From Octopus sinensis (lineage: Eukaryota), in contig NC_042999.1 of assembly GCF_006345805.1 (NCBI RefSeq), positions 85,126,001 through 85,190,000 on the forward strand: DNA of 64,000 nucleotides. The letters run 5' to 3'. The notes under the pieces are model-generated. The model saw nothing but the letters and a program-made list of their open reading frames with translations, was not told the origin of the DNA and did no database searches. The stretch's first letter is position 1; each line of letters starts with the position of its first letter. Both the position numbers and the translations under genes were made by a program. Positions 1 through 50,993 of the stretch are shown in pieces.

Positions 1-372
1 TCTTCTTTTTTACTTTTCTTTTTCTGTTTTATTTTTCCCCCTTCCAATTTCTGGACCATCTTTTCCTCGTTTTTTCCTTGTGATTTCTCTTGTTCTGTCG
101 TCCCGATCTGTAACTTGTATTGATCATAGCTCAGAGCCCACATATTGCTTTGAAACACTAGGTGTGCTATTAAAACCTACATATACAACATCTCCAGTGT
201 ATGAAATTAAGTGAAGCACATAACTATATTTTATATGGATTAAACAGTGTTTATCTCAGACAGTATGGAGTATTTTTTGTTGATCATACCTTAACAGAAA
301 AGTAAACTAAATCTATGTGTACGTGTATGAGTGCTTGTGTGTATGTGTCCGTGTGTATATAAATGTATGTAC

Positions 373-6330: not shown

Positions 6331-6372
<42 letters not shown>

Positions 6373-6398: not shown

Positions 6399-6433
<35 letters not shown>

Positions 6434-6521
6434 ACATATATATATATATATACATTATATATACATATATATATATATCTAATATATAATATATATATAT
6501 ATATATATATAATATATATAT

Positions 6522-6569
<48 letters not shown>

Positions 6570-6624
6570 ATATATATATATATATGTATATATATACTTT
6601 ATTAAGTAGTATACAATAAAAACG

Positions 6625-7450: not shown

Positions 7451-7737
7451 GCCTTCTCTTCCTGCATACACAAGCATATTTTGCACTCAGATACTTCAAA
7501 GAAGAGCCATTACCTGCGACGGTAATCCCAACAGAGTAGCCCGTCCTGAACGTGAAATCTGAACACACAAGCACACAATACACACACACAAGAAATATGC
7601 CACAACGATGATCTACCTCAGCACACAAGTTAAGAACACCACACCCAGAATAAAAACAAAATAATGCAAATTGAACAGACAATTTTCACAAGACAAATTC
7701 AAAGGAGACAAATATTCAAAAGATGGCTGTGTGTGTG

Positions 7738-7807
<70 letters not shown>

Positions 7808-13036: not shown

Positions 13037-15725
13037 TAGTCTTATTTTTATCACGTGCTTTCACTGCACTACCAGGCGCAGATCTGTGTGCCTTGAGTAT
13101 GTGCTGTGCTTTATTGTAATGCTTTTATTTTTACAGCATTGAAAGTGTTTTACGTAGGATGTGTGCGGTGCCTAGTAGTGCTATTTTCTGTATGTTATAT
13201 ATACTTGTTAGTCGTTTTATGTATTTGTCAGAATATTTTTTTATCATACCTAATGCGCCTACTTTGATAGGAATTGTTTCTGTTTTTAGACTCCACATTC
13301 GAGTTACCTCCATTTGCAGATCTTTTTATTTTGAATGTTTCTCCGTTTCTTTTGGAGAAACATTGACGGATATATTTCTTTTTCATTCGCAAAATATGCA
13401 TTTTTTTTAAAGACAATATAAAATCTGAAGATCGGCTATAATAATAAAGTTTTCCAGTCAAATTGCTATGAAGATATGATGTTGTGGGGATAAAATTGGA
13501 GGAAAAAGATACAGAGGTTTCAAAATCGAAAAAAACTGTATTTATAGCCAAAAGCGAGACATATATTTACTGCGTTTAGTGTAGCGGTGTCAACTATTCA
13601 AGCCAGCAGACTAAGGTGTCACATATTCATTGGTCCTGCTTCAACAACCCTGCGAAGAAAGCTTGCAGTTCCAAGCAATGCTGGTTTTAGTAGGTGTCCT
13701 ACCGTCACACCTGAACCAATCTTTTTCAGCTATGTTGGTATTTGAGTGCTGATACTTCCAAGTGCACCAATTACTATTGGTATCACGACTACTCTCTTTA
13801 TTGACCGCAACCTTCGTATTTCCCACTTTAAATCCTCATAGTTGTTTATTTTTTCTTCTTCTTTCACATTGATCCTGTTATCACCGGGTATGCTATGTTG
13901 ATTATCATACATGTCCTTTCTTTTTTATTCACCACAACAATGTCCGGTGTCGGGTGATCGCACTGGATCTTTGCATCCCACAAGATTTTACAATTATCAT
14001 ATTCGGTGACTCCTTCTAGACTTTACTCATAGCACGTCTTTGCTCTTTGTAGGCCGTGATTTCCACAGATCTTCCCATAGATCATTCTTGCTACATGTCA
14101 TGGCGTCTTTTGTATTCCTGTTGTGCCCAATTTTGGGCATCCACTAAACGATGTGGCATACCGTTTCACTTCTCACACCATCCATTCTGCTTTTGTCGCT
14201 ATCGGCAGTACTGTCGATTCTGCACTTCATATAGCTGGTCCTTAACGTTTATTCCTGAGCTGCACATATGAGTACTTCTGTCTCTAGCTTCAGGTTACTC
14301 ATCCTCATCCATAACCAACGGTCCACTGCAACTGTTTTGGCCCGCATATCTCTTACATTTTCTTTTCTTTCCATGCTTTTGTTTTCTTCATTTCTTGTTT
14401 AAATTTTTCTTTCGTTACACATTTTTTAGATTTGAGGACGCTGACCTTCTTCATGTGTTTCAACAGTGGTTCCACGGCACATTTTATATACTACACTAAT
14501 CTGTTTTCCTCTGCTTCAATACAGTCCCGGAAAATGATCAAACCTCTCCCACTCTTTCTTCTGGACAAGTACAGCCTATCGGTGCCACTCTTAAGGTAGA
14601 AGACTCCACATGCTGTCAACATTTTTCTTGTCTTAGTATCCATTTTCTTCACTTCTCTCTTTTGCCATTTTATAATTCCTACTCTATACCACCCCACACC
14701 AATAATAAAAATGATAGTAATAATAATAATTATTATTATTAATATTATTATTGTTGTTGTTGTTGTTGTTGTTGTTATCACTAAAGGCGGCGATCTGGGA
14801 GAATCGTTAGCACGTCGGGCGAAACGCTTAGTGGTATTTCGTCTACCTTCTGAGTTCAAACACTAGGGTCGATGTAATCGACTACATCCTACCTAAAATT
14901 TCTGGACTTGTGCCTATTGTAGAAAGGATTATTATTATTGTTGTTGTTGTTGTTGTTGTTATTATTATTATTATTATTTCGGTTTGGCACAGGTTTGGTC
15001 TTATTCTTGGTAGTATTTATGTGTATGACGGGTTACTATCTGTAACGTTAGATATTCACAAGTTTTCAGCAGTCTTTGAAGTGCTTAGAACACCCCTGAT
15101 AACCTTTGCTGTCCCAAAGAAGACAAACTTTCTGTTGGAGCACTACCAGGCGTACTATTTCAAACTCACAAAATCTTACATTTCTCCGATGCCAGTACTC
15201 TTTCCATTCAATGATTGCACCATGTGTTTCCAGTTTCAAATCCCCATTTCTGGCACAGTTTATAATGTAAAACATTTACAACTTGATCGTACTTCCATTT
15301 CTTATATTCTTCCGTTGCCAACTTAGGGCATTCTTCCACAATGTGTGCTACTATCTCGTTCCAAATTGCACAGGCTCTACGTTTTACCCAAGTTGTTTGT
15401 TTTTATTGCTTGATCTTGAGCTGCTACAGTTAGGCACTCTTTCTTTTTTTAATTGTTCTTTTTTAACCAAGCCTAATATTTTGTTCCACGTACATGGCCA
15501 TGCATAATTATCCACAAGTTTTCAGTAGTCTTTCAATTGCTTAGAACTCTTCTTATAACCCTTGCTGTCCCTAAGATGCAAACTTTCTATAGGAGCTCTA
15601 TCGAGCATTCTATTTTAACATCCTTCAGCCATTTGTCTATACCTTGACTTACTATTCCCAACGCACTAATTATTATACGCAGGACTTTTACTGTTCGCAT
15701 GCTCCAAATTCTTCTCATTTCAAAT
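13034..15725 (-). mobile_element. Stack of older R4/Dong-like 3' fragments separated by (TAA)n/(CAA)n runs
   Basis: Repeated C-terminal motifs (KIALLGTAHILRKTLS; VVVIPIVIGALG; IIISALGIVSQG) and an RT-thumb piece (KKMDTKTRKMLT...DRLYLSRRKSGRGL). Mirror copy about 57770-60140 (+). Confidence 0.75.
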
Positions 15726-15785
<60 letters not shown>

Positions 15786-15889
15786 TCATCATCATCATCA
15801 TCCTCATCGTCATTATTATTAATGAATGGCGACATAAACTATAAAGCTAAACATCTTATCAAGTAAGCTATCCAGAAACCTATCAAACG

Positions 15890-15956
<67 letters not shown>

Positions 15957-15982
15957 TGTAGTAGTAGTAGTAGTAGTAGTAA

Positions 15983-16035
<53 letters not shown>

Positions 16036-17464
16036 TATCGAATTTAACATTAGCAATTTGAAGTATATCGTTGATGACCACAAAAAGGCTAAGACATAGA
16101 TGTAGCGATAGAAATACTTTGATTGATTGACAGATAAGCAGACGGAGAGGAAGGTTTAAAATTACTTACGACTTGGCCCGTAGTCTGTCCAAAAAGAAAC
16201 AAAATTGATAATATTATATTCAAAACTGATTCATTAAAAGCCATAGATTAGAGCAAGAAGCAAAATACATATGTATGTGTATATATGTAGTGGGGAGCAA
16301 AATGAGTAACTTTTGATTCCTCATTTTCTCCTTACATGTTTGAAAATCATTACATTGCAAGTATAGCATTACTATTTTCTACTGCTGGATCATTTTTAGG
16401 AGTAAAAATGGGTCAGCACAGCTGTTGTTGTTGTTGAAGTTTAAAGCGTTCAGAACATAGTCAGATAGCAGGTCCCATTTTTCTTAAGAAAATTTTCCTT
16501 AATTTTGACCCGATTGGAATTGAGGTTGCTAATAAAATATCTGGATAGTTTTTGGCGCTTAATAATCCATATTCTTTTCCCTGTTGGATTCCAAGTCAAT
16601 TTTTTTCCACACTAATATCTAATTTAATCATTTTAAAGTTTCAACAGTGATGTCTAAGATGAGTAATTATCGGCTAATTTCAATAGTCGATAAGTACTGT
16701 ATGGTGTGTAAATACATCAGGAAGAAGACACTCCAGCATATCGTGATGAAGCTACAGCGAATATTTTATGTTGAGTTGGTTTTTTTTTTTAGTCGAGTTT
16801 CTTTAATTTCATATCACGTGCCATTTTCGCCTGATCTTTTTTTATTTAACTTTTTTCTTGCATTTCTGATCTTTCTTGTGTCTAGGGATAGCTAGGGATG
16901 TGTATGAGTCTCTTTTCTGGAGAATTTATCTTTACCTTATCATGGCTTACTCGTTTTGCCCCGGCCAAAGTTGTCTTTTATATACTCAAAGAGAATGGCG
17001 ATAATTTTCTAAAATAGTGATGAGATCGTATTATAATGCTTTTAATGCATTTAGTGAAGGCCATTTCCTTACCTAATATAGTTTTTGTAATGTAGTGAAC
17101 ATTTGTAGAAAATACATTTTGCCTCAAAGTCAAAAATGCAGAAAAGGCTCCTCGTTGAGCCCCATTACCACCACAACCTATATATATGAGAGAGAAAGAG
17201 AGAGAGGGAGGGAGAGAGAGAGAGCATATTGACGGTGTATTAAACTTTACTTACATGGATTTCCCGCTATGCCCAGACATAGAGTCGCAATTACTACAAA
17301 TAAAGAATATTATTTATTAGATTAAATTAAAATCGTAACGATTTTGTTTGGTTATTTAAAAAATTACAAGGATAATATATTGTAAGTGATTTAATTGATT
17401 CTGTTAAAGAACCGATATATGTTAGGTTAGAAAGAAAGTTCTGTCACAATTTTGACATAATCAG

Positions 17465-18600
17465 TTCGAGGGTACGTTTGCAATACTTACTGTTTAATAA
17501 GCTTTAATTTTTACATTCCAATGTTTTTCTTTTTCTTTTATTTTTGTTTGTTTGTCGATTGTACCATAGTGTTCTTTTTTTTCGTATCGTTTTTACCCCT
17601 TTTAAAATTACTTTAGATTAGATTTTGCACATGTTAGAAACTGCTTACGGTATAAATTCGAAAAAGGCTCTGCTGCAATGGAAGTCACTAGAAATATTTG
17701 TTGTCTGTAAAAATTAAGCTTTGTCCGGAAATGTCAATAATAGTTTCGTTAGTTTCGCTCGAGATTTTTTTTCTGTTGTTCTGTTTAAAAACCGTAGTTG
17801 AGGAAAATCCCAACCAAACTGCATGAGTGTTACCAAAACAATTCAATTCAAATCACTCTTAAATCATAAAATACCTTAATGGACTAAGTAAGAAAAGTAT
17901 CTAAACTTGGCTGCTGCGACCCTATCATCTGATTGCCGCTCAGCATAATCATAGAGTTTCCCTATGCTCGTCGTTAAAGAGTAGACTTGCTGCTGAATAT
18001 TTCCTGGTAGAATCATAACAAATGGTGATCATAGGTTTTTTATAACTATATTCAACAAAAATGACAATGGTTAGCACCCAAGGAGAAAGAAGAATCCATC
18101 TCCGAACCAAGAGTATTCCCGAAAATATTATGCTTTGTATTTAGTGGTAGATGAAGGGTGGTCATCTATCTTAAAGTGTTAAACCAAAACGAAACAGTTA
18201 ATGCAAAGTATTGTCGTAAACGAAAGCATTGCACAAAAATTTGCAGTAAAAGCACCCGTCATTGCTCAGTCGTAAGGGGTGTTGTTCTTACATCATAAAG
18301 CAAAACTACATGTTACCCACGTCACTCAGGGAAAGGTAATGGCACTAAATATTGAACTTTTGCCACATCCTCCTAACGCTCCTGACCATACTCCTTCTGA
18401 CAATCATCTTTTCAGATTATTGTAACATTATTTAGATGGAAAACTGTTTATAAATTGTGAAGAGGTTAAAGATGTTGTTGAGAGTTTCTTTGCTTAAAAA
18501 CTGAAGGATTTTCTGCTCGAGTGATCGACAGTTTGTAAATAGACGGAATTAGGTTATCAATAATGAGGGGAAATATTATGTTGAGTAGATATATTAATTA
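17465..18600 (+). mobile_element. Degenerate mariner-like transposon
   Basis: Decayed motifs including ELLPHPPNAPDHTPSDNHLF (HPPYSPDLAPSDYHLF-like). Mirror copy about 54910-56050 (-). Confidence 0.7.
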
Positions 18601-18719
18601 AGATCAAAGGAGTATTTCTTTCTTTCTTTCTCATCTTGAAATGTAACTGGACTTTTTCTAATAGTTTTTGATTCTCCTGGGAAGTTCAAATTTACTGTAG
18701 TGGAAATATAATTTAGAGA

Positions 18720-19900
18720 TAGAGAGAAGTGGAGGAGAAAAGATGAGACAAAGTCACTACTCAAGAAAGTATGAAAACGGTGATACGTACCAGCAACAGC
18801 TGCAATAAACGATAGATTCTTCATCTTGGCGAATTATGCTGCAAAGTCCGAAAACCAGACCTTTTATAACATGGAATACCAAATATAATCAATATGTATA
18901 TATCGAGCACAGATGGTGCATTAAATGTAATAAAACTGAAATACATGTGTGGGAACTATCAAACTATAAAGTGGGTGTATATGGTTACAGCCCAAATTTA
19001 TCGGTATTTATTGCATATTCGAAGGAAAAATGGAATTAACCCTTGAATTCACGTGTTGGAATATGTACTGATGGGGTACCATCTATGACAGGCTCTATTA
19101 AAGGTTTTGTATCTCTCGTAAAACAACAAAATTCTAATGTTATACGTAATCATTGCTTCCAACACAGGAAGGTACTAGCTTCAAAAACAATACCAGTTGA
19201 GTTAAAGCAAGTATTAAGCCAAACTGTTGAAATGCGCCAAAACATTTTGACTTATTGTAAGGTGCGCCGTGAGTAAAAAAAGTTGGGGAAACACTGCTTT
19301 AGTTTGTTAACATTTGTGATTAGAGAAGATTATTCCTATAATAATATTAGCAAACTCCATAAGGGAATGGAGAAGGAAATTCGTTTATTTGTCGTTTATT
19401 TGTCGTTTATTTGAATGAATTTGTGTTGATTTTGATTCTCTGCACAAGCGCTTACTTTTACACACAAAAGTCAGATGACTCTCAGAACTTCAGAAGGAAT
19501 TGCAAGCATTTTTAAAGAAGAAAAACACGAACGCTTCTTGGAATAACTCCACTGAGAATTTTAGTTTTCCAAGCTGGAATATTTAACAGAGATATTTGCA
19601 CAACTTTAGCATCAACACCAGTAGTCAAAGTAGAGATGAAAACATTATCACTTCATCAGATAAGCTGGTTTCATCTAGAAAGAAAGTTGTAATTTGGGAA
19701 AATAGAGCTGAAGGTGGTAACTAAGAAATGTTTCCCTTAATACGTAAAAGCTGCATAAAAGAAATGACTCCTATTGTATTTGAACAAATCTAGAAGAAAA
19801 AATTAACATCTATTTTCTGTCATTGAACACAGAAGAGTATGATTGGGTTCGAATTTATTTGAGTTGGGATTTTCAACCCCCAATAGCATCAGATCCTAAA
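18720..19900 (+). mobile_element. hAT (Buster/Charlie-like) transposase remnant
   Basis: ORF 19043-19276 GICTDGVPSMTGSIKGFV...NHCFQHRKVLASK matches the hAT CTDGAxxMxG and HCxxHR motifs. Confidence 0.75.
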
Positions 19901-21230: not shown

Positions 21231-21263
<33 letters not shown>

Positions 21264-21265
21264 TA

Positions 21266-21926
21266 AATAGTTATCGCCATACTAATATGGTACTCTATAA
21301 ATATAAGACTAAAGCTGTCGCTGATTAGCTCCAAGGGGCCATCGCCTCTAGCTAGCTATTTGACACACGAACCTGCGTCCATTACAAACCTTCGAACAGG
21401 GGAGGTCAGCCGCTTCACCTTGCTAGTCAGACATCTGCAGACATGTTTCAGGGTTGTTGCCCTTTATCAATGCAGCGTAGTCAGACCCGCAGGTGTCGCT
21501 ACTGACCGTCTGTTCGAAGATTTTATTTACCTAGTTACAGTGGAATACATCCACTTGTTTTCAATAATAGAAATATTAAAATTACTAAGTCTCTCTAAAG
21601 GAGATTACGACAGCGTTACTGGATATTAATAGTTATCGCCATACTAATATGGTAGTCTATAAATATAAGACTAAAGCTGTTGCTGATTAGCTCCAAGAGG
21701 CCATCGCCTCTAGCTAGCTATTTGAGACACGAACCTGCTTCCATTACAAACCTTCGAACAGTGGAGGTCAGCCGCTTCACCTTGCTAGTCAGACATCTGC
21801 AGACATGTTTCAGGGTTGTTGCCCTTTATCAATGCATTGATATTAGTATGGCGATAACTATTAATATCCAGTAACGCTGCCGTAATCTCCTTTAGAGAGA
21901 CTTAGTAATTTTGATATTTCTATTAT
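21266..21926 (-). repeat. Hammerhead-bearing tandem repeat, family A variant A' (~362-bp unit) with inverted terminal segment
   Basis: Hammerhead folds at 21435-21475 and 21797-21836 (-): CTGCA-TTGATAA-AGGG-CAACAA-CCCT-GAAAC-AT-GTC-TGCAG. 21840-21926 is an inverted copy of about 21567-21650. Confidence 0.85.
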
Positions 21927-23900: not shown

Positions 23901-23915
23901 TATATATATATGTAT

Positions 23916-24827
23916 ATAATAGAAATATTAAAATAACTAAGTCTCACTAAAAGAGAACAGCGGCAGCGTTCCCAGAAAATAATAGTTATCGCCATACTAA
24001 TATGGCATTCTTATAAAAATAAGAAAAAAAGCCTCATGGAGCTAATAAGCGGACAGCTTTTTTCTTATTTTTATAAGAATGCCATATTAGTATGGCGATA
24101 ACTATTATTTTCCGGGAACGCTGCCGCTGTTCTCTTTTAGTGAGACTTAGTTATTTTAATATTTCTATTATTGAAAACAAGTGGATGTATTCCACCGAAA
24201 CTAGGTAAATAAAACCATCGAGCAGAGATTGTCGGAAGCGACACCTACTGCTGGCTACGCTGCATTGAAAAGGGGCAATACCCCGAAACGCGTCTGTAGC
24301 TGCCGGTCAAGTAGTGTGGAGCGACTGACCTCCCTTGTTCGAAGGTTATATGGATACAGTTTGTGTATCAAATAGCTAACTTAAGGCGATGGCCTCATGG
24401 AGCTAATAAGCGGACAGCTTTTTTCTTATTTTTATAAGAATGCCATATTAGTATGGCGAAACTATTATTTTCCGGGAACGCTGGCGCGGTTCTCTTTTAG
24501 TGAGACTTATTATTTTAATATTTCTATATATTGAAAACAAGTGGATGTATTCCACCGAAACTAGGTAAAATAACCATCGAACAGAGATTGTCGGAACGAC
24601 ACCTACTGGCTGGCTACGCTGCATTGAAAAGGGGCAATACCCCGAAACGCGTCTGTAGCTGCCGGTCAAGTAGTGTGGAGCGACTGACCTCCCTTGTTCG
24701 AAGGTTATATGGATACAGTTTGTGTCCAATAGCTAACTTAAGGCGATGGCCTCATGGAGCTAATAAGCGGACAGCTTTTTTCTTATTTTTATAAGAATGC
24801 CATATTAGTATGGCGATAACTATTATT
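23916..24827 (+). repeat. Family A hammerhead tandem array (~359-bp unit) with a ~116-bp inverted 5' segment
   Basis: Two hammerheads at 24259-24300 and 24618-24659; 23916-24032 is the reverse complement of 24056-24171. Confidence 0.9.
24259..24300 (+). ncRNA. Minimal type I hammerhead ribozyme, U3-A8 core variant
   Basis: GCTGCA-TTGAAAA-GGGG-CAATA-CCCC-GAAAC-GC-GTC-TGTAGC; predicted cleavage after C24294. Identical copies at 24618-24659 (+), 27843-27884 (-), 28033-28074 (+); a damaged copy at 28395-28434. Confidence 0.85.
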
Positions 24828-24897
24828 GATATGTATATAGATATATGTATATAGATATATGTATATATATATATATACATATATATATATTGATATA

Positions 24898-25616
24898 TAC
24901 GTCACGATGTATATACCGCTACTGTATATAACTCACTTTGATATTTATCATTGTTTGATTTCACTTTTTCAATATCAGCGACAGTGGACGCTGGAAAAAG
25001 TATAAGTATTTGTGAAGGAAATCTAATTCTCGGCGACAACTATGATTGTCACACGCTGACGAGAGGTCAATACCTCGAAACTCGAGTCCGTGTGTATCAT
25101 AAGTTGAAGACGGGAAGGATGACTTCCCTTTGCAAATACTGACAGGACACAGATAGTGTGTCTATGGCCAGCTGGAGGAGTGTGTCCTCCTGGGGCTAAA
25201 AACTACAGTAGCATCCACCCTTAGGGGTTAGCCATATTGAAATGGCAAAAATACGTCACGATGTGTTACCGCTGCTGTATATAACTCACTTTGATATTTA
25301 TCATGTTTGTTTGATTTCACTTTTTCAATATCAGCGACAGTGGACGCTGGAAAAAGTATAAGTATTTGTGAAGGAAATCTAATTCTCGGCGACAACTATG
25401 ATTGTCACACGCTGACGAGAGGTCAATACCTCGAAACTCGAGTCCGTGTGTATCATAAGTTGAAGACGGGAAGGATGACTTCCCTTTGCAAATACTGACA
25501 GGACACAGATAGTGTGTCTATGGCCAGCTGGAGGAGGAGTGTGTCCTCCGGGCTAAAAACTACAGTAGCATCCACCCTTAGGGGTTAGCCATATTGAAAT
25601 GGCAAAAATACGCCAC
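24898..25616 (+). repeat. Family B hammerhead tandem repeat (356-bp unit, two copies)
   Basis: Near-identical units with hammerheads at 25050-25094 and 25406-25450, embedded in (TA)n. Confidence 0.9.
25050..25094 (+). ncRNA. Canonical minimal type I hammerhead ribozyme
   Basis: CACACG-CTGACGA-GAGGT-CAAT-ACCTC-GAAACT-CG-AGTC-CGTGTG; GUC cleavage triplet ends at 25088. Further copies at 25406-25450, 33252-33296 (-), 33604-33648 (-), 33960-34004 (-), 34300-34344, 34653-34697. Confidence 0.92.
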
Positions 25617-25729
25617 TATATATATATAATATATATATAATATATATAATATATATATATATATACACAATATATATATATCATAGTTATATGTATATAG
25701 ATATATGTATATATATTGACATATGTATT

Positions 25730-27192
25730 AAAGTGTTTGAAAGAGTGTTAAGATCAAGGATAGCTGACTTCCTGGAGACCTAGAAACTCCTAAATTCAAA
25801 TCAGCATGGCTTTCACTGTGGCAGGGACTGTCTAACACAGCTCTTACACCACATTGAAGATGTACTCAAAGTCTTGGGAACAGGTTCGAACTCTTACGTC
25901 ATATATCTTGACTTCAGTAAAGCGTTCGACAGGGTAGACCATAACATCCTACTCTCAAAATTGGCAAATGTTGGAATCCGTGGAAAACTTCTACACTGGA
26001 TTAAATATTTCCTGGCGAATAGAACACAACATGTTGTAGTTGATGGAGTCCACTCAAACCCAGCAAAAGGCACCAGCGGTGTTCCCCAGGGAACTGTTTT
26101 GGGTCCGCTACTCTTCATAATTTACGTAAACGACCTTTCCAGTGTCGTACATTACTGCAAAGTGAAAATATTCGCTGATGACACTAAGCTCCAGCAAATC
26201 GTCAATGAAGAAGCAGACCGAACTCAACTCCAGTCTGATCTATATGCTGTGAGTCAATGGGCAGACAGAAACAAAATGCAACTGAATGAGGGAAAATTTG
26301 AGCTGATGCATTTTGGAAGAAATTCCTCACTAAAACAACCATACTCTCTTCCTTCAGGGGAACCGCTCACAGCCTCTAACAATATCAGAGACCTGGGTGT
26401 AATTGTTGATGACGATCTCAGTTGGAGTGCACACATCAACAAGAAGGTCGATATAGCCCGTAGGATGAGTTCCTGGATCTTAAGAACTTTCCGGTCTAGA
26501 GAACAAGGTGTCATCATACCACTTTTTCCCTCCTTTGTACGGCCACACCTTGAATACTGCTGCCCACTGTGGTCTCCTCACACAAGACAAAACATCTCCA
26601 GAATTGAGTCACCCCAGAGGGCTCTCACTAAACAAATTGAAGGCATGGCTGCTCTCGATTATTGGGATCGCCTTAAAGCCTTAAAACTTTACTCCCTCCA
26701 GCGTCGCCGTGAGCGGTACATCATTTGTACGATGTGGAAAATATACCGCCAACTTTGCCCAAACGACCTAAACATTAGCTTCAAGGTTCATCCAAGGCTT
26801 GGACCAAGGGCTATACGTCCCCTGCCAAATTCAAGATCACAACATACATGTACACTGCAACATAATTTCTTTTCCTCAACAGGCCCTGCCCTATTTAACA
26901 TTGTCCCGAGGGAGATCAAAGAGGAAAAGGATCCCATCAACTTTAAACAGAGTCTGGATAGATTCCTTCAAAGAATACCAGATAAGCCACCCATAATTGG
27001 ATACAACTCACCCAACAAGAACTCACTACTTGAACAAAACTGGATACAACTCACCCAACAAGAACTCACTACTTGAACAAAACTTGACTTAAACAGGATT
27101 CGAATAATCCTATCAGGTGGTGCTATTAAGTTAGACATGGCCTGGACCAATCTTTGGTCGAAACATATCTAAGTTTATCTAAGTCTAAGTTT
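25730..27192 (+). mobile_element. 5'-truncated CR1/L2-like LINE (RT ORF 25874-27076)
   Basis: YLDFSKAFDRVDH, SGVPQGTVLGPLLF, IFADDTK, RPHLEYC, LYSLQRRRERY; 3' tail of CTAAGT-like repeats. Confidence 0.92.
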
Positions 27193-27214
27193 ATATAGAT
27201 ATATGTATATAGAT

Positions 27215-28602
27215 ATTAATTGTTATCGCCATATTAATATGGCATTCTTATAGATATAAGAATAATCGCTGCCATGGTCAGCACCATGTATCAATATTAA
27301 TTGTTATCGCCATATTAATATGGCGATAACAATTAATTTCCAGTAAACGCTGCCGTAATGTCTTTTATAGAGACTTAGTAATTTTAAGATTTCTATTATT
27401 GAAAACAAGTGGATGTATTCCACTGAAACTAGGTAAATATAAGCCTTCGAACAGCGACGTCAATGGCGACACCTGCGGGTCTGACTGCGCTACATTGACA
27501 AGGGGCAATACCCCGAAACACGTCTGTAGCTGTCGGACTGGCAGTGTGAAGCGGCTGACCTCCCATGTTCGAAGGTTATAATGGATACAGATCGTGTATC
27601 AATAGCTATCTTGATGGCGGTGGCCTCATGGAGCTGACCATGGCAGCGATTATTCTTATATCTATAAGAATGCCATATTAATATGGCGATAACGATTAAT
27701 TTCCAGTAAACACTGCCGTAATGTCTTTTATAGAGACTTAGTAATTTTAATATTTCTATTATTGTATATAGATATATGTATATATATTTCCATATAACCT
27801 TCGAACAAGGGAGGTCAGTCGCTCCACACTACTTGACCGGCAGCTACAGACGCGTTTCGGGGTATTGCCCCTTTTCAATGCAGCGTAGCCAGCCAGTAGG
27901 TGTCGCTTCCGACAATCTCTGTTCGATGGTTTTATTTACCTAGTTGAAAACAAGTGGATGTATTCCACCGAAACTAGGTAAATAAAACCATCGAACAGAG
28001 ATTGTCGGAAGCGACACCCACTGGCTGGCTACGCTGCATTGAAAAGGGGCAATACCCCGAAACGCGTCTGTAGCTGCCGGTCAAGTAGTGTGGAGCGACT
28101 GACCTCCCTTGTTCGAAGGTTATATGGATACAGTTTGTGTATCAAATAGCTAACTTAAGGCGATGGCCTCATGGAGCTCATAAGCGGACAGCTTTTTTCT
28201 TATTTTTATAAGAATGCCATATTAGTATGGCGATAACTATTATTTTCCGGGAACGCTGCCGCTGTTCTCTTTTAGAGAGACTTAGTTATTTTAATATTTC
28301 TATTATTGAAAACAAGTGGATGTATTCCACCGAAACTAGGTAATAAAACCATCGAACAGAGATTGTCGGAAGCGACACCTACTGGCTGGCCTACGCTGCA
28401 TTGAAAAGGGGCAATACCCGAAAGCGTCTGTAGCTGCCGGTCAAGTAGTGTGGAGCGACTGACCTCCCTTGTTCGAAGGTTATATGGATACAGTTTGTGT
28501 ATCAATAGCTAACTTAAGGCGATGGCCTCATGGAGCTAATAAGCGGACAGCTTTTTTCTTATTTTTATAGAATGCCATATTAGTATGGCGATAACTATTA
28601 TT
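27215..28602. repeat. Family A hammerhead arrays: variant A2 (27215-27772) and family A (27789-28602) with an internal strand flip
   Basis: A2 hammerhead 27489-27530: GCTACA-TTGACAA-GGGG-CAATA-CCCC-GAAAC-AC-GTC-TGTAGC. The family A copy is on (-) at 27843-27884, then on (+) at 28033 and 28395. Confidence 0.88.
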
Positions 28603-28694
28603 TTATATGTATATAAATATATGTATATAGATATATGTATATAGATATATGTATATATATATATGTATATATATTATATGTATATAGATATACG

Positions 28695-28934: not shown

Positions 28935-30640
28935 ACTTTGATACTTTGATAGGTTTCGGCCATTATTGGCCCAGGCCATGTCTAACTTAATAGCACCACC
29001 TGGTGAAGTCTTTCAAGTCAGAATTTGGGCACTATGGCCCACTCAAGTAGAGAGTTATTGTTTACAGAGACATATCCGGGTGTAGGGGGTTTATCCGGGA
29101 TTTCTTGAAGGAATCTGTCCAAAGACCTCTTGAACCCTATAGGGTCAGTTTCTGTTTTAATGTGTTTTGGTGTAATGTCAAAGAGAGCGGTGCCAATTGA
29201 GGTGAAATAATTGTGCCGTATTGTTGTTATGAGATGAGAGTGCGATTTTTGTTTTGGGCGGATGGCGCGGGGCCCAAGCCTTGGATATACCTTAAAGGTG
29301 ATGCCAACATCATTTGGGCAATGCTGATGGAATATTTTCCACATCATGCAGATGATGTAGCGCTCACGACGACGTTGGAGAGAATAAAGTTTTAGCTTTT
29401 CTAGTCGACCCCAATAGTCGAGGCCTGTCATGCCATCTATCTTTCTTGTGATTGCCCTTTGAGGTGCTTCAACTTTTATGATACTTTGTATTGTGTGGGA
29501 AGACCACAATGGACAACAGTATTCAAGGTGGGGTCGGGCAAAAGTGGAGAAGAGAAGGATAATGGTGTGGATATCTCTCGACTGGAAAGTTCTGAGAATC
29601 CAGGAACACATTCTGCGGGCCATGTCAACTTTGGTGTTTATATGAGTGGCCCAGCTTATGTTGTTGTCCACAATTACTCCCAAGTCTCTGATGTTGTTGG
29701 ACGCCGCGAGAGTTTCACCTGAAGGAAGGGAGTATGGGAGTTTCAGGGCATCCTCTTTTCCAAAGTGGATTAACTCAAATTTATCCTCGTTCAGCAGCAT
29801 ATTGTTTTTTTCTGCCCATTGGATAACAGCCAGTAGATCTGACTGAAGGCATGTCCGGTCACTCGCCTCATTTATGATCTTCTGTAGCTTGGAATCATCT
29901 GCAAAGATTTTTATGTTGCTGTGCTTGATGATGTCATTAATGTCATTAATGTAGATGATGAAAAGAAGTGGGCCCAGCACAGTGCCTTGCGGAACGCCAC
30001 TACTGACTTTGGCTGGGTTAATCTTATTACCCCTTCAACTACAACATGTTGAGATCTGTCTGTCAGGAAAACTTGATCCATTTCAGTAACTTTCCAGAGA
30101 CACCAATGTTGGATAGTTTTTTCAATAGGATCTTGTGATCGACCCTGTCGAAGGCCTTACTGAAATCAATAAAGAAGACATCGGTGTTGCGGCCCTCTCC
30201 CAAAGCTCTCAAAATGTCATCAAAGTGATGCAGGAGCTGCGTTAGGCAGTCCCTTCCATTACGGAACCCATGTTGGTTAGAGATCAGCCGTCTGTTGCTT
30301 TCAGAAATTGGGTTATTCGAGATCTCACCACCCTCTCAAATACCTTGATGATATGAGAGGTGAGTGAGATCGGATGGTAGTTCACTGCAAGGGACTTGTT
30401 TCCTTTTTGAAAACTGGGACAACAGACTGGGGCAGAAGGTTTTTGGAATATAGCCAGCATCCAGTGAGTTTCTCCACAGATTAGCAAGAGGAGATGCAAG
30501 TTGGTGTCGACACACCTTCAGGACACAGCAGGGAACCTATTGGGGCCTACTGCTGAATTGTGTTTTATTTCGTTTATCGCCGCTAAGACCAGGGGCACTA
30601 AACGTTATGTCCGATATAGTGTGCTGGGGGTTGACATCAC
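28935..30640 (-). mobile_element. 5'-truncated CR1/L2-like LINE, paralogous to 25730-27192
   Basis: ORF 29018-29980 (LGPLLFIIYIND, IFADDSK, RPHLEYC), upstream NYHPISLTSHIIKVFE; the same 3' UTR and an ATCAAAGT repeat tail. Confidence 0.9.
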
Positions 30641-31245: not shown

Positions 31246-31544
31246 TACGCACAGGGTTCGATCTAATCGACTTAATCACTTTGTCTGTCCTTGTTTGTCC
31301 CCTCTATGTTCAGCCCCTTGTGGGCAATAAAGAATTAAGAAACGTTAGCACGCCGAGTGAAATGCTTAGCAGTATTTCGTCTGCCGCTACGTTCTGAGTT
31401 CAAATTTCGCCGAGGTCGACTTTGCCTTTCATCCTTTCAGAGTCGATAAATTAAGCACCAATTATACACTGGGGTCGATGTAATCGACTTAATCCCTTTG
31501 TCAGTCCTTATTTGTCCCCTCTGTGTGTAGCACCTTGTGGGCAG

Positions 31545-32960
31545 TAAAGAAATAAGAAAAACAAGTTTACTTTTTCTCCTAGACTAGTGGTGGGGAAACT
31601 TTTTTGTAAAAAGTTTCCAGAGTAAAAGGTTTGCGGGCGAATCACAAGTTCTAACTCTGTGTTACTCATGTATATATGTATGTATAAGTCGATATACATT
31701 AATAAAGATAAGTTTGACATTAAATTAACGCGTAACATCTTCATTAACACCGCCACTGAATTTAGGACGTTAATATTACTTATTCTTTATATTTCAGCTA
31801 GAGAGTAGTTGGGTCTCAAGGGGGTGGTACAAACCTAGCGGTGTGTGTTTTATAGTGAAAACAAAATTTTCGTACAAATGGCAATTACCGGACGATTTTC
31901 TGTCCGAGTTTAACCGTTTTAAGTCGTAGTGGACACGTGACCTATGTCGCAAGTAGACATACGAATATTGTACAAATTTTATAATTGAAAAATTTACTAT
32001 ATCTTGTACATACGAATATACCAAACTTCGGGAGCAATAAAATGCACTTGCGGGTGAAATTGCGCCCGCGACGTGGATTTCACTTCCCCTTTCCTAGACT
32101 GTAAACGCCGATCAAATTGTTCTCCTCATTCGAACTACGAATTGCTTTACCAATGAGAAGGTGGTGAGCTGGCAGAAACGTTAGCACGCCGGGCGAAATG
32201 CTTAGCTGTATTTCGTCTGCCGCTACGTTCTGAGTTCAAATTCCGCCGAGGTTGACTTTGCCTTTCATCCTTTCGGGGTCGATTAAATAAGTACCAGTTA
32301 CGCACTGGGGTCGATATAATCGACTTAATCCGTTTGTCTGTCCTCGTTTGTCCTCTCTGTGTTTAGCCCCTTGTGGGTAGTAAAGAAATAGGTATTTCGT
32401 CTGTCTTTACGCCCTGAGTTCAAATTCCACCGAGGTCGACTTTGCCTTTCATCCTTTCGGGGTCGATAAATTAAGTACCAGTTGCGTACTGGAGTCGATC
32501 TAATCGACTGGCTCCCTCCCCCCAAATTTCAGGCCTTGTGCCTAGAATAGAAAAGAATTGCTTTACCAATGACACTACACGCACAAAAATTCTTTCTCTC
32601 TCTTTCTCTCTTCCTCTCTTTTAATATTCATTGTATTATATTGGTCGACGAACTGCAGAATCGTTAGCAAGCTGGCATAATACTTAGCGGCATTTTTTCC
32701 CGTCTACATGATCTGAGTTGAAAATCTGCTGAGGTCGACTTTGTCTTTCATACTTTCGGAGTTGATAAAATAAGTACCAGTTGAAGATTGTGGTCGATGT
32801 AATCGACTTACTCTATCTCGATCTTGCTAGCCTTGTGCTAAAATTGACACCAATTATTTATTGCATTGTATTAACATCGTAAATTTCACCATAAAACAGT
32901 TTTTCTTATTTGTTGTAACAGGTGGATAGTTTTTATGCCATACTATACTACTACTACTAC
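31545..32960 (+). repeat. 1.4-kb direct duplication, second copy at about 37270-38690
   Basis: Near-identical sequence; paired ORFs 31794-32024/37525-37755 and 32325-32525/38056-38256 differ at few residues. Confidence 0.9.
32165..32860 (+). mobile_element. Cluster of tRNA-derived SINE family 2 copies (others at about 14780-14910, 31340-31560, 37060-37290, 37895-38590, 44730-45125, 58600-58730)
   Basis: Shared GAGCTGGCAGAAACGTTAGCACGCCGGGCGAAATGCTTAGC...GAGTTCAAATTCCGCCGAGGTCGACTTTGCCTTTCATCC...GTCGAT.TAATCGAC sequence. Confidence 0.8.
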
Positions 32961-33044
32961 TCTACTACACTAGCCCAAGATGCCACGCAGTGGACTGAAC
33001 CCGGAACCATGTGGTTGGTTAGGAAGCTACTTGCCACAGCAGCG

Positions 33045-33090
<46 letters not shown>

Positions 33091-34902
33091 GTGACGTATT
33101 TTTGCCATTTCATGGCTAACCCCTAAGGGGGGATGCTACTGTAGTTTTTAGCCCCAGGAGGACACACTCCTCCAGCTGGCCATAGACACACTTTCTGTGT
33201 CCTGTCAGTATTTGCCAAAGGAAGTCATCCTCCCGTCTTCAACTTGTGATACACACGGACTCGAGTTTCGAGGTATTGACCTCTCGTCAGCGTGTGACAA
33301 TCATAGTTGTCGCCGAGAATTAGATTTCCTTCACAATACTTATACTTTTTTTTCCAGCGCCCACTGTCGCTGATATTGAAAAAGTGAAATCAAACAATGA
33401 TAATATCAAAGTGAGTTATATACAGTAGCGGTAACACATCGTGACGTATTTTTGCCATTTCAACATGGCTAACCCCTAAGGGTGGATGCTACTGTAGTTT
33501 TTAGCCCCAGGAGGACACACTCCTCCAGCTGGCCATAGACACACTTCTGTGTCCGTCAGTATTTGCAAAGGGAAGTCATCCTTCCCGTCTTCAACTTGTG
33601 ATACACACGGACTCGAGTTTCGAGGTATTGACCTCTCGTCAGCGTGTGACAATCATAGTTGTCGCCGAGAATTAGATTTCCTTCACAAATACTTATACTT
33701 TTTCCAGCGCCCACTGTCGCTGATATTGAAAAATGAAATCAAACAATGATAAATATCAAAGTGAGTTATATACAGTAGCGGTAACACATCGTGACGTATT
33801 TTTTTGCCATTTCAACATGGCTAACCCCTAAGGGTGGATGCTACTGTAGTTTTTAGCCCCAGGAGGACACACTCCTCCAGCTGGCCATAGACACACACTT
33901 TCTGTGTCCTGTCAGTATTTGCAAAGGGAAGTCATCCTTCCCGTCTTCAACTTGTGATACACACGGACTCGAGTTTCGAGGTATTGACCTCTCGTCAGCG
34001 TGTGACAATCATAGTTGTCGCCGAGAATTAGATTTCCTTCACAAATACTTATACTTTTTCCAGCGCCCACTGTCGCTGATATTGAAAAAGTGAAATCAAC
34101 CATGATAAATATCAAAGTGAGTTATTACAGTAGCGGTAACACATCGTGACGTATTTTTGCCATTTCAACATGGCTAACCCCTAAGGGTGATGCTGTGTTT
34201 TTAGCCCCAGGGACACACTCCTCCAGCTGGCCATAGACACACTTTCTAAAGTATAAGTATTTGTGAAGGAAATCTAATTCTCGGCGACACTATGATTGTC
34301 ACACGCTGACGAGAGGTCAATACCTCGAAACTCGAGTCCGTGTGTATCATAAGTTGAAGACGGGAAGGATGACTTCCCTTTGCAAATACTGACGGACACA
34401 GAAAGTGTGTCTATGGCCAGCTGGAGGAGTGTGTCCTCCTGGGGCTAAAAACTACAGTAGCATCCACCCTTAGGGGTTAGCCATGTTGAAATGGCAAAAA
34501 TACGTCACGATGTGTTACCGCTACTGTATATATACTCACTTTGATATTTATCATTGTTTGATTCCACTTTTTCAATATCAGCGACAGTGGGCGCTGGAAA
34601 AAGTATAAGTATTTGTGAAGGAAATCTAATTCTCGGCGACAATTATGATTGTCACACGCTGACGAGAGGTCAATACCTCGAAACTCGAGTCCGTGTGTAT
34701 CATAAGTTGAAGAGGGAAGGATGACTTCCCTTTGCAATACTGACAGGACACAGAAAGTGTGTCTATGGCCAGCTGGAGGAGTGTTCCTCCTGGGGCTAAA
34801 AACTACAGTAGCATCCACCCTTACGGGTTAGCCATGTTGAAATGGCAAAAATACGTCACGATGTGTTACCGCTACTGTATATAACTCACTTTGATATTTA
34901 TC

Positions 34903-34905
<3 letters not shown>
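33091..34905. repeat. Family B hammerhead tandem array: three units on (-), flip at about 34247, two units on (+)
   Basis: Hammerheads at 33252, 33604, 33960 (-) and 34300, 34653 (+); flanked by (TA)n on both sides. Confidence 0.9.
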
Positions 34906-50430: not shown

Positions 50431-50993
50431 GACATACGACCTAAAAAGCGACCTAAAATTAGTTGGAATTTGCTACTCTGGTCTCAGAAGCATTTTGGTT
50501 GTTGGCCAGTATTATCGAAGATACATACACAAAGTATGTGATTTGCTTGTTCACCGGTAGGCTCCTATTTGATGCGGTGGAGATGACTCTCTCAAAGTGC
50601 CGAGTGTTAAACCATATGAAAGTAATAGACAGGCAAGACAACTCGCTCCAAATCCCCAAAATGTGTGTTCGGTAATGTTTACAACGCTAGCACTGTTTTA
50701 ATTCATATTCGAATTTATTCCTACGTTGGGGCGTACCAGCAAATGGTTTTTACACTATTTTGCATATAGTCATAGTCTGGAGAGTCAGTTCGCCCCCATT
50801 TCGGCTCAGGTACGTAATGTTGATAAGCCACAAAAATGGCGAAACATCGATGTCCATCATTCCTGAAAGGGATTTGGAGTCAGTTGTCTCCAACTCTATT
50901 AGTTTCAGATGTTTTAACAGCCGGCACTTTGAGGGAACCATCTCAATTGCGCTAAATCGCAGTGTACCGGTGAACAAATAAAGTGCATACGTT

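What the first reader, a model, noticed from the sequence alone, without database searches (positions are those of the whole stretch)
23916..28602. Retrozyme-like tandem arrays built on a U3-A8 variant hammerhead (family A)
Non-coding ~359-bp monomers each carry GCUGCA-UUGAAAA-GGGG(CAAUA)CCCC-GAAAC-GC-GUC-UGUAGC (24259, 24618, 27843 -, 28033, damaged 28395; variant A2 at 27489). The core reads UUGANAA rather than CUGANGA. Established: positions 3 and 8 form a Watson-Crick pair in the active fold and U3-A8 is a tolerated compensatory swap; minimal type I hammerheads with palindromic stem III are thought to cleave as dimers; animal retrozymes are tandem repeats of a few hundred nt processed into circular RNAs. 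Searches requiring CUGANGA would miss this family entirely. Predicted unit RNA: 24295-24653 (359 nt). I know of no description of such a family in cephalopods but cannot verify novelty.
Basis: partly seen in the sequence, partly recalled or inferred. Interest (0 to 1): 0.9.

Follow-up and report, generated by a model that had tools for sequence, protein, structure and literature searches.

The report
Variant-core hammerhead retrozyme repeats
Short tandem repeats of a non-coding ~360-nt unit each carry a self-cleaving hammerhead ribozyme whose core has a known but rare paired swap (U3-A8 for C3-G8); they look like mobile circular-RNA "retrozymes", and their insertion junctions show how they were copied into the genome.

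Summary
The motif GCUGCA-UUGANAA-GGGG(CAAUA)CCCC-GAAAC-GCG-UC-UGUAGC is at every stated coordinate. A diverged subfamily (A3, 21261-21926, minus strand) adds two copies, and an unrelated element at 50814-50860 adds a third U3-A8 hammerhead. Chance expects about 0.015 hits. Across subfamilies about 20% apart, no core position changes. Only the free position 7 varies (A/C/U), and stem changes are compensatory. Each unit folds into a stable rod, and helix III is a palindrome that supports a double hammerhead. Rfam misses family A entirely.

The stated span is not one array. It holds three short family-A insertions (1.3-2.5 units each), a canonical-core family-B array, a LINE fragment and microsatellite.

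New here: every array lies in a TA-rich microsatellite. Seven of eight family-A termini fall at two (C)TATTATT-type motifs, and every family-A insertion has an inverted 5' arm. This is the partial-tandem plus inverted-copy, microsatellite-targeted pattern described for Penelope-like elements. It argues for reverse transcription of a circular or multimeric RNA.

Novelty is limited. Natural U3-A8 hammerheads were reported in 2011 and 2014, and mollusc non-LTR retrozymes in 2020. I file this as a new member of a known kind. Cleavage and circular RNA are untested.

The parts
24295..24653 (+). Reference family-A unit (359 nt), from cleavage site to cleavage site. This is the predicted linear or circular RNA monomer.
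   Evidence: GUC|U cleavage sites after C24294 and C24653. RNA fold -115.5 kcal/mol, z = -5.5, rod closed by an extended helix I.
23914..24827 (+). Family-A insertion 1. Inverted arm covers unit 237->125 (23914-24029). Direct copies cover unit 98-359, 1-359 and 1-175 (24031-24827).
   Evidence: BLAST map, TRF, junctions.
24259..24300 (+). U3-A8 hammerhead, family A: GCUGCA-UUGAAAA-GGGG-CAAUA-CCCC-GAAA-CGCG-UC|UGUAGC.
   Evidence: covariance model 56 bits.
24618..24659 (+). U3-A8 hammerhead, family A, second copy in insertion 1.
27212..27764 (+). Family-A2 insertion. Inverted arm covers unit 179->103 (27212-27288), followed by a short palindrome (27296-27324). Direct copies cover unit 148-363 and 1-240.
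27489..27530 (+). U3-A8 hammerhead, variant A2. Core is UUGACAA. Helix I pair 2.3/1.3 is A-U. Helix III is ACACGU, not a palindrome.
27789..28604 (+). Family-A insertion 4. Inverted arm covers unit 60->1 and 359->265 (27789-27945). Direct copies cover unit 237-359, 1-359 and 1-177 (27944-28604).
27843..27884 (-). U3-A8 hammerhead inside the inverted arm of insertion 4.
28033..28074 (+). U3-A8 hammerhead, family A.
28395..28434 (+). Damaged family-A hammerhead with two 1-nt deletions, one in helix II and one in GAAAC.
   Evidence: 37 bits.
21261..21926 (-). Family-A3 insertion, about 79-80% identical to A and A2. Inverted arm covers unit 238->152 (21926-21840). Direct copies cover unit 328-362, 1-362 and 1-179.
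21434..21476 (-). U3-A8 hammerhead, variant A3: (G)CUGCA-UUGAUAA-AGGG-CAACAA-CCCU-GAAA-CAUG-UC|UGCAG(A).
21796..21838 (-). Second A3 hammerhead. Its 5' helix-I strand is cut by the inversion junction.
24897..25619 (+). Family-B array (356-nt unit, 2.03 units) with the canonical type I hammerhead CACACG-CUGACGA-GAGGU-CAAU-ACCUC-GAAA-CUCGAG-UC|CGUGUG. Context only, not family A.
   Evidence: Rfam Hammerhead_1 32.2 bits against a gathering score of 34.
33088..34904 (.). Head-to-head family-B arrays: 33088-34247 on the minus strand (3.3 units) and 34248-34904 on the plus strand (1.9 units). Same inverted-arm layout as family A.
25740..27190 (+). 5'-truncated LINE (RVT_1 reverse transcriptase, 3' hairpin and short-repeat tail) inserted in the same microsatellite. 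A second copy lies at about 28936-30640 on the minus strand.
50814..50860 (+). Unrelated single U3-A8 hammerhead 'C': GUAAUG-UUGAUAA-GCCA-CAAAAA-UGGC-GAAA-CAUCGAUG-UC|CAUCAU. It has a 10-nt palindromic helix III and sits inside a ~480-nt rod.
   Evidence: chance 0.027 per window; Rfam HH9 30.4 bits, E 3e-6; fold z = -11; covariance model 48 bits.

Best explanation
Family A, with subfamilies A, A2 and A3, is a non-coding, non-autonomous retroelement of the animal non-LTR retrozyme kind. SHOWN BY SEQUENCE: each ~360-nt unit carries a type I hammerhead in which the C3-G8 core pair is replaced by U3-A8. Helix I is 6 bp, is followed by a UAC internal loop, and continues into a long rod that closes the unit. 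Helix II is 4 bp. Helix III is only a 6-nt palindrome. INFERRED MECHANISM: transcripts longer than one unit pair two neighbouring hammerheads through the helix III palindrome to form a double hammerhead, and cut after GUC into ~360-nt monomers. A host tRNA ligase then circularises the monomers, as shown for other retrozymes. INFERRED FROM THE JUNCTIONS: new copies arise by target-primed reverse transcription at nicks in TA-rich microsatellite. Priming occurs by microhomology at internal A/U-rich sites of the RNA. These are (C)UAUUAUU at unit ~175, which is 12-16 nt after the hairpin GCCAUAUUAGUAUGGC, or the same motif at unit ~240. Synthesis then runs through more than one unit of a circular or uncleaved multimeric template, which gives partial tandems. 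The 5' end is finished by twin priming or a template jump, which gives an inverted 5' arm. The enzyme is most likely from a Penelope-like element, whose insertions have the same layout. A LINE is the alternative.
For: Hammerhead reality. There are 8 descriptor hits of U3-A8 type and 7 canonical, against 0.015 expected. A, A2 and A3 are 77-80% identical. Between them, all 12 fixed core positions (U3 U4 G5 A6 A8 A9 G12 A13 A14 A15.1 U16.1 C17) are unchanged, while the free position 7 is A, C or U. Pair 10.1/11.1 changes G-C to A-U. Helix III changes ACGCGU to ACAUGU and stays a palindrome. Helix I pair 2.3/1.3 is G-U, A-U or G-C. My estimate of about 11 changes all avoiding 12 of 42 sites has P about 0.02. 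Adding families B and C, 96% of cells pair, 10 of 11 pairs change on both sides, 0 of 500 shuffles match this, and slid controls pair at 27-47%. Cofolding of A and B gives the double hammerhead through helix III. Rod-like folds: z = -5.5 (A), -6.4 (A3) and -6.0 (B), and the closing helix is kept with compensatory pairs. The units are non-coding: ORFs are at most 93 aa and their translations have no homologues. GC is 41-42%. U3-A8 is active in vitro and occurs naturally (PMC3088659; PMC4209133). Retrotransposition. Four family-A insertions and three family-B arrays all abut TA-rich microsatellite. Seven of eight family-A termini, read as the 3' end of the RNA sense strand, fall at unit ~175-179 or ~237-240, and all four family-A insertions have an inverted 5' arm. 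Two family-B arrays end at the same ..AAAAUACGUCAC, 16 nt after a similar hairpin. Partial tandems, inverted 5'-truncated copies and microsatellite or (TA)n targeting are described for PLEs (PMC8557442). PLEs are the proposed retrozyme mobilisers (PMC7229834; bioRxiv 10.64898/2026.07.22.740005). A PLE with reverse transcriptase and C-terminal GIY-YIG domains lies at 3140-4789.
Against: There are no RNA data, so cleavage, circularisation and transcription are all untested. The covariation rests on only three subfamilies plus B and C, all from one 64-kb window. No related sequence was found in any searchable collection. A2 has a non-palindromic helix III (ACACGU), and one A copy is damaged. PLE mini-hammerheads, including dimeric ones, cleave poorly in vitro. 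The PLE in the window shares no sequence with A or B and has no hammerhead in its 3' flank. Two LINE copies also end in the same microsatellite, so the enzyme is not identified. Insertions 1 and 4 could be related partly by DNA duplication, because they are 96% identical over 735 nt, including microsatellite flank. The assembly contains a gap and large inverted duplications, so some misassembly cannot be excluded.
Confidence: 0.65

Rival explanations
1. Family A is a dead relic. It descends from a canonical retrozyme whose hammerhead was inactivated by two ordinary transitions (C3->U and G8->A), and it has since persisted or amplified only at the DNA level as a minisatellite.
For: Both core changes are transitions. 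All copies could inherit them from one ancestor. The arrays are short. One copy is damaged and A2 has lost the helix III palindrome. The hammerhead region is only slightly more conserved than the unit average, 0.75-0.8 against 0.70.
Against: The two changes are exactly the pair that restores a Watson-Crick 3-8 pair. After them, three lineages about 20% apart accumulated about 11 hammerhead changes. None is in the 12 fixed core sites and most are compensatory. An unrelated element (C) carries the same U3-A8 core with fully covaried helices. The A copies are 96-98% identical and lie in insertions with different 5' layouts, which indicates recent mobility. U3-A8 is reported active.
Confidence: 0.15
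2. The arrays and their inverted arms are DNA-level products, not reverse-transcribed insertions. Candidates are replication slippage, fold-back or break repair in an unstable TA microsatellite, or assembly artefacts.
For: TA-rich microsatellites are fragile and hard to assemble. The window has a 100-N gap and large inverted duplications. Insertions 1 and 4 share 96% identity into their flanks.
Against: Seven of eight family-A termini coincide with two short sequence motifs of the unit, always as sense-strand 3' ends. This holds across three subfamilies that differ by about 20%. Family B shows the same logic with its own fixed end. Random breakage or misassembly would not select these positions (rough P around 1e-9).
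Confidence: 0.1
3. The elements are mobilised by the CR1/L2-like LINE whose two copies lie in the same microsatellite, in the manner of a SINE, and not by a Penelope-like element.
For: Two 5'-truncated copies of this LINE end in the same TA-rich repeat. The LINE has a 3' hairpin and short tail, and families A and B also have a hairpin just upstream of their 3' junction. L1-type twin priming gives 5' inversions (my own knowledge).
Against: Local alignment of both LINE 3' UTRs to the A, A2, A3 and B units scores no better than shuffles. Partial tandems with an inverted 5'-truncated copy is the published PLE pattern. The literature links retrozymes to PLE terminal repeats.
Confidence: 0.2

Closest known systems
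Animal non-LTR retrozymes (Cervera & de la Pena 2020, PMC7229834), for example the Mytilus galloprovincialis 350-400-nt circular-RNA retrozymes and the newt/axolotl satellite 2
   Same: [quoted passage not shown] One type I hammerhead per unit with a weak, palindromic helix III. Non-coding. GC below 45%. Highly structured monomer. Multiple dispersed loci.
   Different: The core is UUGANAA rather than CUGANGA. The arrays here are very short (1.3-2.5 units). Every family-A insertion has an inverted 5' arm and lies in TA microsatellite, and the papers read here do not describe such junction details for retrozymes. Expression as circular RNA is untested. The host is probably a cephalopod, and no paper in the searched library describes these elements in cephalopods.
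U3-A8 mini-hammerheads of Schistosoma mansoni Cercyon Penelope-like elements (Cervera & de la Pena 2014, PMC4209133), and the natural U3-A8 covariants of Perreault et al. 2011 (PMC3088659)
   Same: The same compensatory core swap, U3-A8 in place of C3-G8. A predicted need to act as dimers. Association with retroelements.
   Different: The Schistosoma motifs are minimal hammerheads in PLE terminal repeats and mostly occur as single copies. Family A is a full type I hammerhead with a 6-bp helix I, a UAC internal loop, and a 4-bp helix II with a CAAUA loop. It sits in tandem, rod-forming, retrozyme-type units.
Family B in the same window (canonical type I hammerhead retrozyme, 356-nt unit)
   Same: Unit length, GC content, rod fold, palindromic helix III, TA-microsatellite targets, a fixed 3' end after a GCCAUAUU..AUGGC hairpin, and head-to-head arrangement.
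   Different: The core is canonical CUGACGA. Helix II is 5 bp. Apart from the hammerhead and the hairpin there is no sequence similarity to family A.
Penelope-like element insertions (Craig et al. 2021, PMC8557442)
   Same: Partial tandems, an adjacent inverted 5'-truncated copy, and insertion bias for microsatellites, including (TA)n.
   Different: Families A and B encode no protein. The 30-40-bp 'tail' described for PLEs was not identified here.

Membership tests
Hammerhead ribozyme, type I | Conserved core: C3(U3) U4 G5 A6 N7 G8(A8) A9 ... G12 A13 A14, the A15.1-U16.1 pair, and H17 at the cleavage site | tested here: met
   All positions are present in 8 of the 9 U3-A8 copies (the damaged copy is the exception). 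Positions 3 and 8 are U and A, a pair reported as a natural and active covariant.
Hammerhead ribozyme, type I | Three helices around the core, supported by covariation, with helix I open | tested here: met
   96% of cells pair; 10 of 11 pairs change on both sides; 0 of 500 shuffles reach this. Helix III is a palindrome that covaries ACGCGU to ACAUGU. Helix I extends into the closing rod.
Hammerhead ribozyme, type I | Match to the curated Rfam models at gathering score | tested here: not met
   No hit at gathering scores. Family A is absent even at E<=10. Element C scores 30.4 bits against 52 for HH9. Canonical family B also falls just short, 32.2 against 34. This reflects the models, which expect C3-G8, not a structural failure.
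Hammerhead ribozyme, type I | Site-specific self-cleavage after H17 | not testable with these tools
   Needs in vitro transcription of monomer and dimer.
Animal non-LTR retrozyme | Tandem repeats of about 150-450 bp, each with a type I hammerhead; no LTR, PBS or PPT; non-coding | tested here: met
   Units of 359-363 nt in arrays of 1.3-2.5 units. ORFs are at most 93 aa, with no homologues.
Animal non-LTR retrozyme | Low GC (below 45-50%) | tested here: met
   41.2-41.8% for family A and 42.7% for family B.
Animal non-LTR retrozyme | Dispersed copies, indicating mobility | tested here: met
   Four family-A insertions from three subfamilies, with distinct junctions and consistent 3' termini. This rests on one window only.
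Animal non-LTR retrozyme | Expression as unit-length linear and circular RNA | not testable with these tools
   No transcriptome is accessible. Searches of metagenome, viral and protein collections returned nothing.
Non-autonomous derivative of a Penelope-like element | Sequence homology of the unit to the terminal repeat of a PLE in the same genome | tested here: inconclusive
   The only PLE in the window (3140-4789) shows no similarity to A or B and has no hammerhead in its 3' flank. The rest of the genome is not available.
Non-autonomous derivative of a Penelope-like element | PLE-type insertion layout: partial tandem, inverted 5'-truncated copy, microsatellite target | tested here: met
   compared with the description in PMC8557442.

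The most novel reading that the evidence does not exclude
U3-A8 hammerheads form a functional retrozyme lineage in this probably cephalopod genome, with families A/A2/A3 and the unrelated element C alongside canonical-core family B. On this reading, the junctions are direct sequence-level evidence for how animal retrozymes integrate. Priming would occur by microhomology at a fixed internal site beside a conserved hairpin. Reverse transcription would run as a rolling circle on the RNA circle, and a twin-primed inverted 5' arm would complete the insertion. All of this would take place at TA microsatellites, which is the signature of a Penelope-like element. A corollary follows: PLE or retrozyme surveys that search only for CUGANGA may systematically undercount hammerheads. 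Naiad PLEs were reported to 'lack canonical HHRs' on the basis of such searches.
Probability: 0.35. Interest if true: 0.65.

Novelty: new member of a known kind. Interest (0 to 1): 0.5.

Why it matters
The find shows that standard annotation misses a whole family of likely active self-cleaving RNAs. Rfam gathering thresholds and CUGANGA descriptors both fail because of one compensatory base-pair swap, so hammerhead and retrozyme censuses in molluscs, and possibly in Penelope-like elements, are probably undercounts. The junctions also bear on an open question: which enzyme mobilises animal retrozymes, and from what template. Fixed internal 3' start sites, read-through of hammerhead sites, inverted 5' arms and microsatellite targets point to reverse transcription of circular or multimeric RNA by PLE-type machinery. 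A genome-wide junction survey and a retrotransposition assay could test this directly.

Tried and rejected
1. Rfam at gathering thresholds over the whole window gave no hits. At E<=10, only family B (Hammerhead_1, 32.2 bits) and element C (HH9, 30.4 bits) appeared. The miRNA "hits" (MIR4208 at 77 bits, mir-297 and others) are the perfect hairpins at inverted/direct junctions and the TA microsatellite, not miRNA genes.

2. I looked for relatives elsewhere. The longest spurious ORFs of family A, concatenated and searched against 5.8 billion proteins, gave nothing. The hammerhead pattern and the 23-nt invariant block found nothing in JGI metagenome contigs or in viral contigs. An exact look-up of the PLE ORF found nothing. 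No cross-species comparison was therefore possible.

3. I tested whether families A and B mimic the 3' end of the neighbouring LINE. Local alignment scores fell within the shuffle distribution, so I rejected this.

4. I tested for homology between families A and B beyond the hammerhead. Only the hammerhead (20 nt, 85%) and the GCCATATT..ATGGC hairpin region (23 nt, 78%, E 0.18) matched. The two are separate families.

5. I searched the 3' flank of the window's PLE for any hammerhead, canonical or U3-A8. None was found.

6. Organism identification. The best named homologue of the LINE reverse transcriptase is from Argonauta hians (59%). A cephalopod origin is plausible but not proven.

7. The primary paper on U3-A8 activity, Przybilski & Hammann 2007 (PMC1986816), is not held. 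I cite it only through Perreault et al. 2011.

Full report
**Observation**

The region was read directly. The motif GCTGCA-TTGAAAA-GGGG-CAATA-CCCC-GAAAC-GCG-TC-TGTAGC is at 24259, 24618, 27843 (minus strand) and 28033. A damaged copy with two 1-nt deletions is at 28395, and variant A2 (core TTGACAA) is at 27489. The pattern search gives 6 hits against 0.00 expected. Tandem Repeats Finder reports a 359-nt period at 24031-24827.

A hammerhead descriptor that accepts either a C3-G8 or a U3-A8 core finds 15 motifs in the window against 0.015 expected from shuffles. A covariance model built from five motif types, run with filters off, finds exactly 16 hammerheads: 9 with U3-A8 and 7 canonical. The next-best hit scores 14 bits against at least 37 bits for these.

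**What the span contains**

The interval 23916-28602 is not one array. It contains:
- three short family-A insertions: 23914-24827, 27212-27764 (subfamily A2) and 27789-28604;
- a family-B array at 24897-25619, with a 356-nt unit and the canonical core CUGACGA;
- a 5'-truncated LINE at about 25740-27190 (RVT_1);
- stretches of (GATATATGTATATA)n-type microsatellite.

This is subfamily A3, on the minus strand at 21261-21926, with two more U3-A8 hammerheads. More family-B arrays lie head to head at 33088-34247 (minus) and 34248-34904 (plus).

**Is it a hammerhead?**

The motif parses as type I:
- Helix I is GCUGCA/UGUAGC.
- The core is U3 U4 G5 A6 N7 A8 A9.
- Helix II is GGGG/CCCC with loop CAAUA.
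- Then come G12 A13 A14, and helix III is A15.1-CGCG-U16.1, a 6-nt palindrome.
- C17 is followed by the cleavage site.

Subfamilies A, A2 and A3 are 77-80% identical overall. Within the hammerhead, the changes between them are these:

| Position | A | A2 | A3 |
|---|---|---|---|
| Free position 7 | A | C | U |
| Pair 10.1/11.1 | G-C | G-C | A-U |
| Loop 2 | CAAUA | CAAUA | CAACAA |
| Helix III | ACGCGU | ACACGU (half-step, not a palindrome) | ACAUGU (palindrome kept) |
| Helix I pair 2.3/1.3 | G-U | A-U | G-C |

A3 also has one terminal helix I mismatch. None of the 12 fixed core positions changes. My rough estimate for about 11 events all avoiding 12 of 42 sites is P about 0.02, and the compensatory pairs strengthen the case further.

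A relaxed scan then found an unrelated single motif, C, at 50814-50860: GUAAUG-UUGAUAA-GCCA-CAAAAA-UGGC-GAAA-CAUCGAUG-UC|CAUCAU.
- Its core is again U3-A8.
- Helix II is fully covaried.
- Helix III is a 10-nt palindrome.
- The chance expectation for such a hit is 0.027 per window.
- Rfam's HH9 model aligns it at 30.4 bits (E 3e-6, below the gathering score of 52) and shows the UAC element 5' of helix I and the CAAAAA loop 2 of the HH9 consensus.
- Family A has the same layout: GGC-UAC-GCUGCA, then the core.

Counting pairs across A, A2, A3, C and B gives the following:
- 96.4% of cells pair.
- 10 of 11 pairs have changes on both sides.
- 0 of 500 shuffles reach the observed values.
- Slid controls pair at 27-47%.

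The caveat is that the structure was derived from these same sequences and there are only five distinct rows.

Cofolding two family-A motifs, or two family-B motifs, gives the double hammerhead joined through the helix III palindrome. This is 5-6 kcal/mol better than two separate monomers. It matches the dimer model of Forster et al. 1988, as summarised in PMC4209133.

**The unit as an RNA**

- Units A, A3 and B fold with z-scores of -5.5, -6.4 and -6.0 against dinucleotide shuffles.
- In each, helix I continues into a long helix that pairs the first ~50 nt with nt ~285-335. This gives a closed, branched rod with helix II as a free hairpin.
- RNAalifold on A, A, A2 and A3 keeps this closing helix, with two-sided changes at two pairs and several G-U transitions.
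- GC is 41-42%, against 36% for the window.
- The longest ORFs are 87-93 aa, and their translations have no homologue among 5.8 billion proteins.
- The most conserved block is not the hammerhead. It is unit ~224-281, which includes the 27-nt invariant TATTGAAAACAAGTGGATGTATTCCAC. Its role is unexplained.

**Junctions: the new information**

In unit coordinates, where <- marks an inverted segment, the four family-A insertions are:

| Insertion | Layout |
|---|---|
| A3 | <-[238..152] \| [328..362][1..362][1..179] |
| A1 | <-[237..125] \| [98..359][1..359][1..175] |
| A2 | <-[179..103] ... [148..363][1..240] |
| A4 | <-[60..1][359..265] \| [237..359][1..359][1..177] |

Every insertion therefore has an inverted 5' arm, and both outer ends are 3' ends of the RNA-sense strand. 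Seven of the eight ends fall at one of two copies of the motif (C)TATTATT (CAATTAAT in A2). One copy is at unit ~175-179 and the other at ~237-240. The eighth end is at TTATATGGA (unit 60). All ends abut TA-rich repeat. The ~175 site lies 12-16 nt after the hairpin GCCATATTAGTATGGC.

Family B has a similar hairpin, GCCATATTGAAATGGC, at the same relative position, and the pattern occurs nowhere else in the window. Two family-B arrays end at the same ..AAAATACG(T/C)CAC, 16 nt after that hairpin. One family-B array starts at that point too, which makes it 2.03 units long. The pair at 33088-34904 is head to head.

None of the array ends is at the hammerhead cleavage site, and the arrays read straight through hammerhead sites. 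I infer that the template was not a cleaved linear monomer. It was a circle or an uncleaved multimer, copied from an internal site that anneals to the nicked TA-rich target. The 5' end would then be completed by twin priming or a template jump. Random breakage would not place 7 of 8 ends within a few nucleotides of two sites in a 359-nt unit (roughly P about 1e-9, my estimate).

Craig et al. 2021 describe this layout for Penelope-like elements: partial tandems, an adjacent inverted 5'-truncated copy, and microsatellite or (TA)n targets (PMC8557442). PLEs are the proposed retrozyme mobilisers (PMC7229834; bioRxiv 10.64898/2026.07.22.740005). [quoted passage not shown] It shares no sequence with A or B and has no hammerhead in its 3' flank.

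Two copies of a CR1/L2-like LINE also end in the same microsatellite. Their 3' UTRs show no significant similarity to A or B. The identity of the enzyme remains open.

**Comparison with what is known**

- The U3-A8 swap is already documented in nature. Perreault et al. [quoted passage not shown]
- Cervera & de la Pena 2014 found a U3-A8 variant in Schistosoma Cercyon PLEs, with about 1,300 hits (PMC4209133).
- Non-LTR retrozymes with 350-400-nt circular RNAs are described in a mollusc, the mussel (PMC7229834).
- No paper in the searchable library describes hammerheads or retrozymes in octopus or other cephalopods. The library is incomplete.
- Rfam misses family A altogether, and even canonical family B falls 2 bits short of gathering. 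The claim that standard searches miss the family is therefore correct.

**Verdict**

The novelty is that of a new member of a known kind: a full type I, U3-A8-core, retrozyme-type family, probably in a cephalopod. The host assignment rests only on a 59% match of the neighbouring LINE reverse transcriptase to Argonauta hians.

The most useful addition from this analysis is the junction layout, which points to a specific and testable integration mechanism. Self-cleavage, circular RNA and the mobilising enzyme remain untested, and all evidence comes from one 64-kb window of an assembly that contains a gap and large inverted duplications. I score interest at 0.5.

Noticed in passing
window 50505-51000 (hammerhead at 50814-50860, + strand): A single-copy, ~480-nt, very stable rod (z = -11) carries a third, unrelated U3-A8 hammerhead with a 10-nt palindromic helix III. 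It lies between the 5' end of an APE-type LINE (49020-50322, minus strand) and a (GT)n repeat. Whether it is a monomeric retrozyme, a PLE terminal repeat or part of the LINE 5' region is unresolved.
   Followed up: partly
window 24897-25619, 33088-34247 (-), 34248-34904 (+): Family B is a 356-nt retrozyme-type repeat with a canonical CUGACGA type I hammerhead. All 7 copies are identical in the motif. It scores 32.2 bits, just under Rfam's gathering score of 34, so routine annotation misses it too.
   Followed up: partly
window 24442-24457 and the other 13 matches listed: The hairpin GCCATATT(N2-6)ATGGC occurs only in family A and B units, at the same relative position (unit ~145-163) and 12-16 nt upstream of the array 3' junctions. 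It may be a shared recognition or priming element.
   Followed up: partly
window unit ~224-281 of family A (e.g. 24519-24576; 27-nt invariant TATTGAAAACAAGTGGATGTATTCCAC): The block best conserved between A, A2 and A3 is not the hammerhead. Its function is unknown; a promoter or a reverse-transcriptase binding site are possibilities.
   Followed up: no
window 23914-24145 and 27849-28040: The inverted/direct junctions form near-perfect hairpins of about 95-115 bp. Rfam mis-scores them as miRNA precursors (MIR4208, 77 bits). If transcribed, they would be long hairpin RNAs.
   Followed up: no
window 25740-27190 (+) and about 28936-30640 (-): Two 5'-truncated copies of a CR1/L2-like LINE (RVT_1) have 3' ends (a hairpin plus short TATCWAAGT repeats) that both abut the same TA-rich microsatellite. 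The first copy has a perfect 43-bp duplication at 26998-27084, at the end of its ORF.
   Followed up: partly
window 3040-4789: [quoted passage not shown] It ends next to a (TTC)n repeat. No hammerhead was found in its 3' flank.
   Followed up: partly
window 4464-7781 vs 64000-60673; 13720-18721 vs 59795-54790; 31338-32972 vs 37069-38707: The two ends of the window are inverted duplicates at 98.6-98.8% identity, and there are further internal duplications. This could be a real inverted segmental duplication, paired transposons or an assembly artefact.
   Followed up: no
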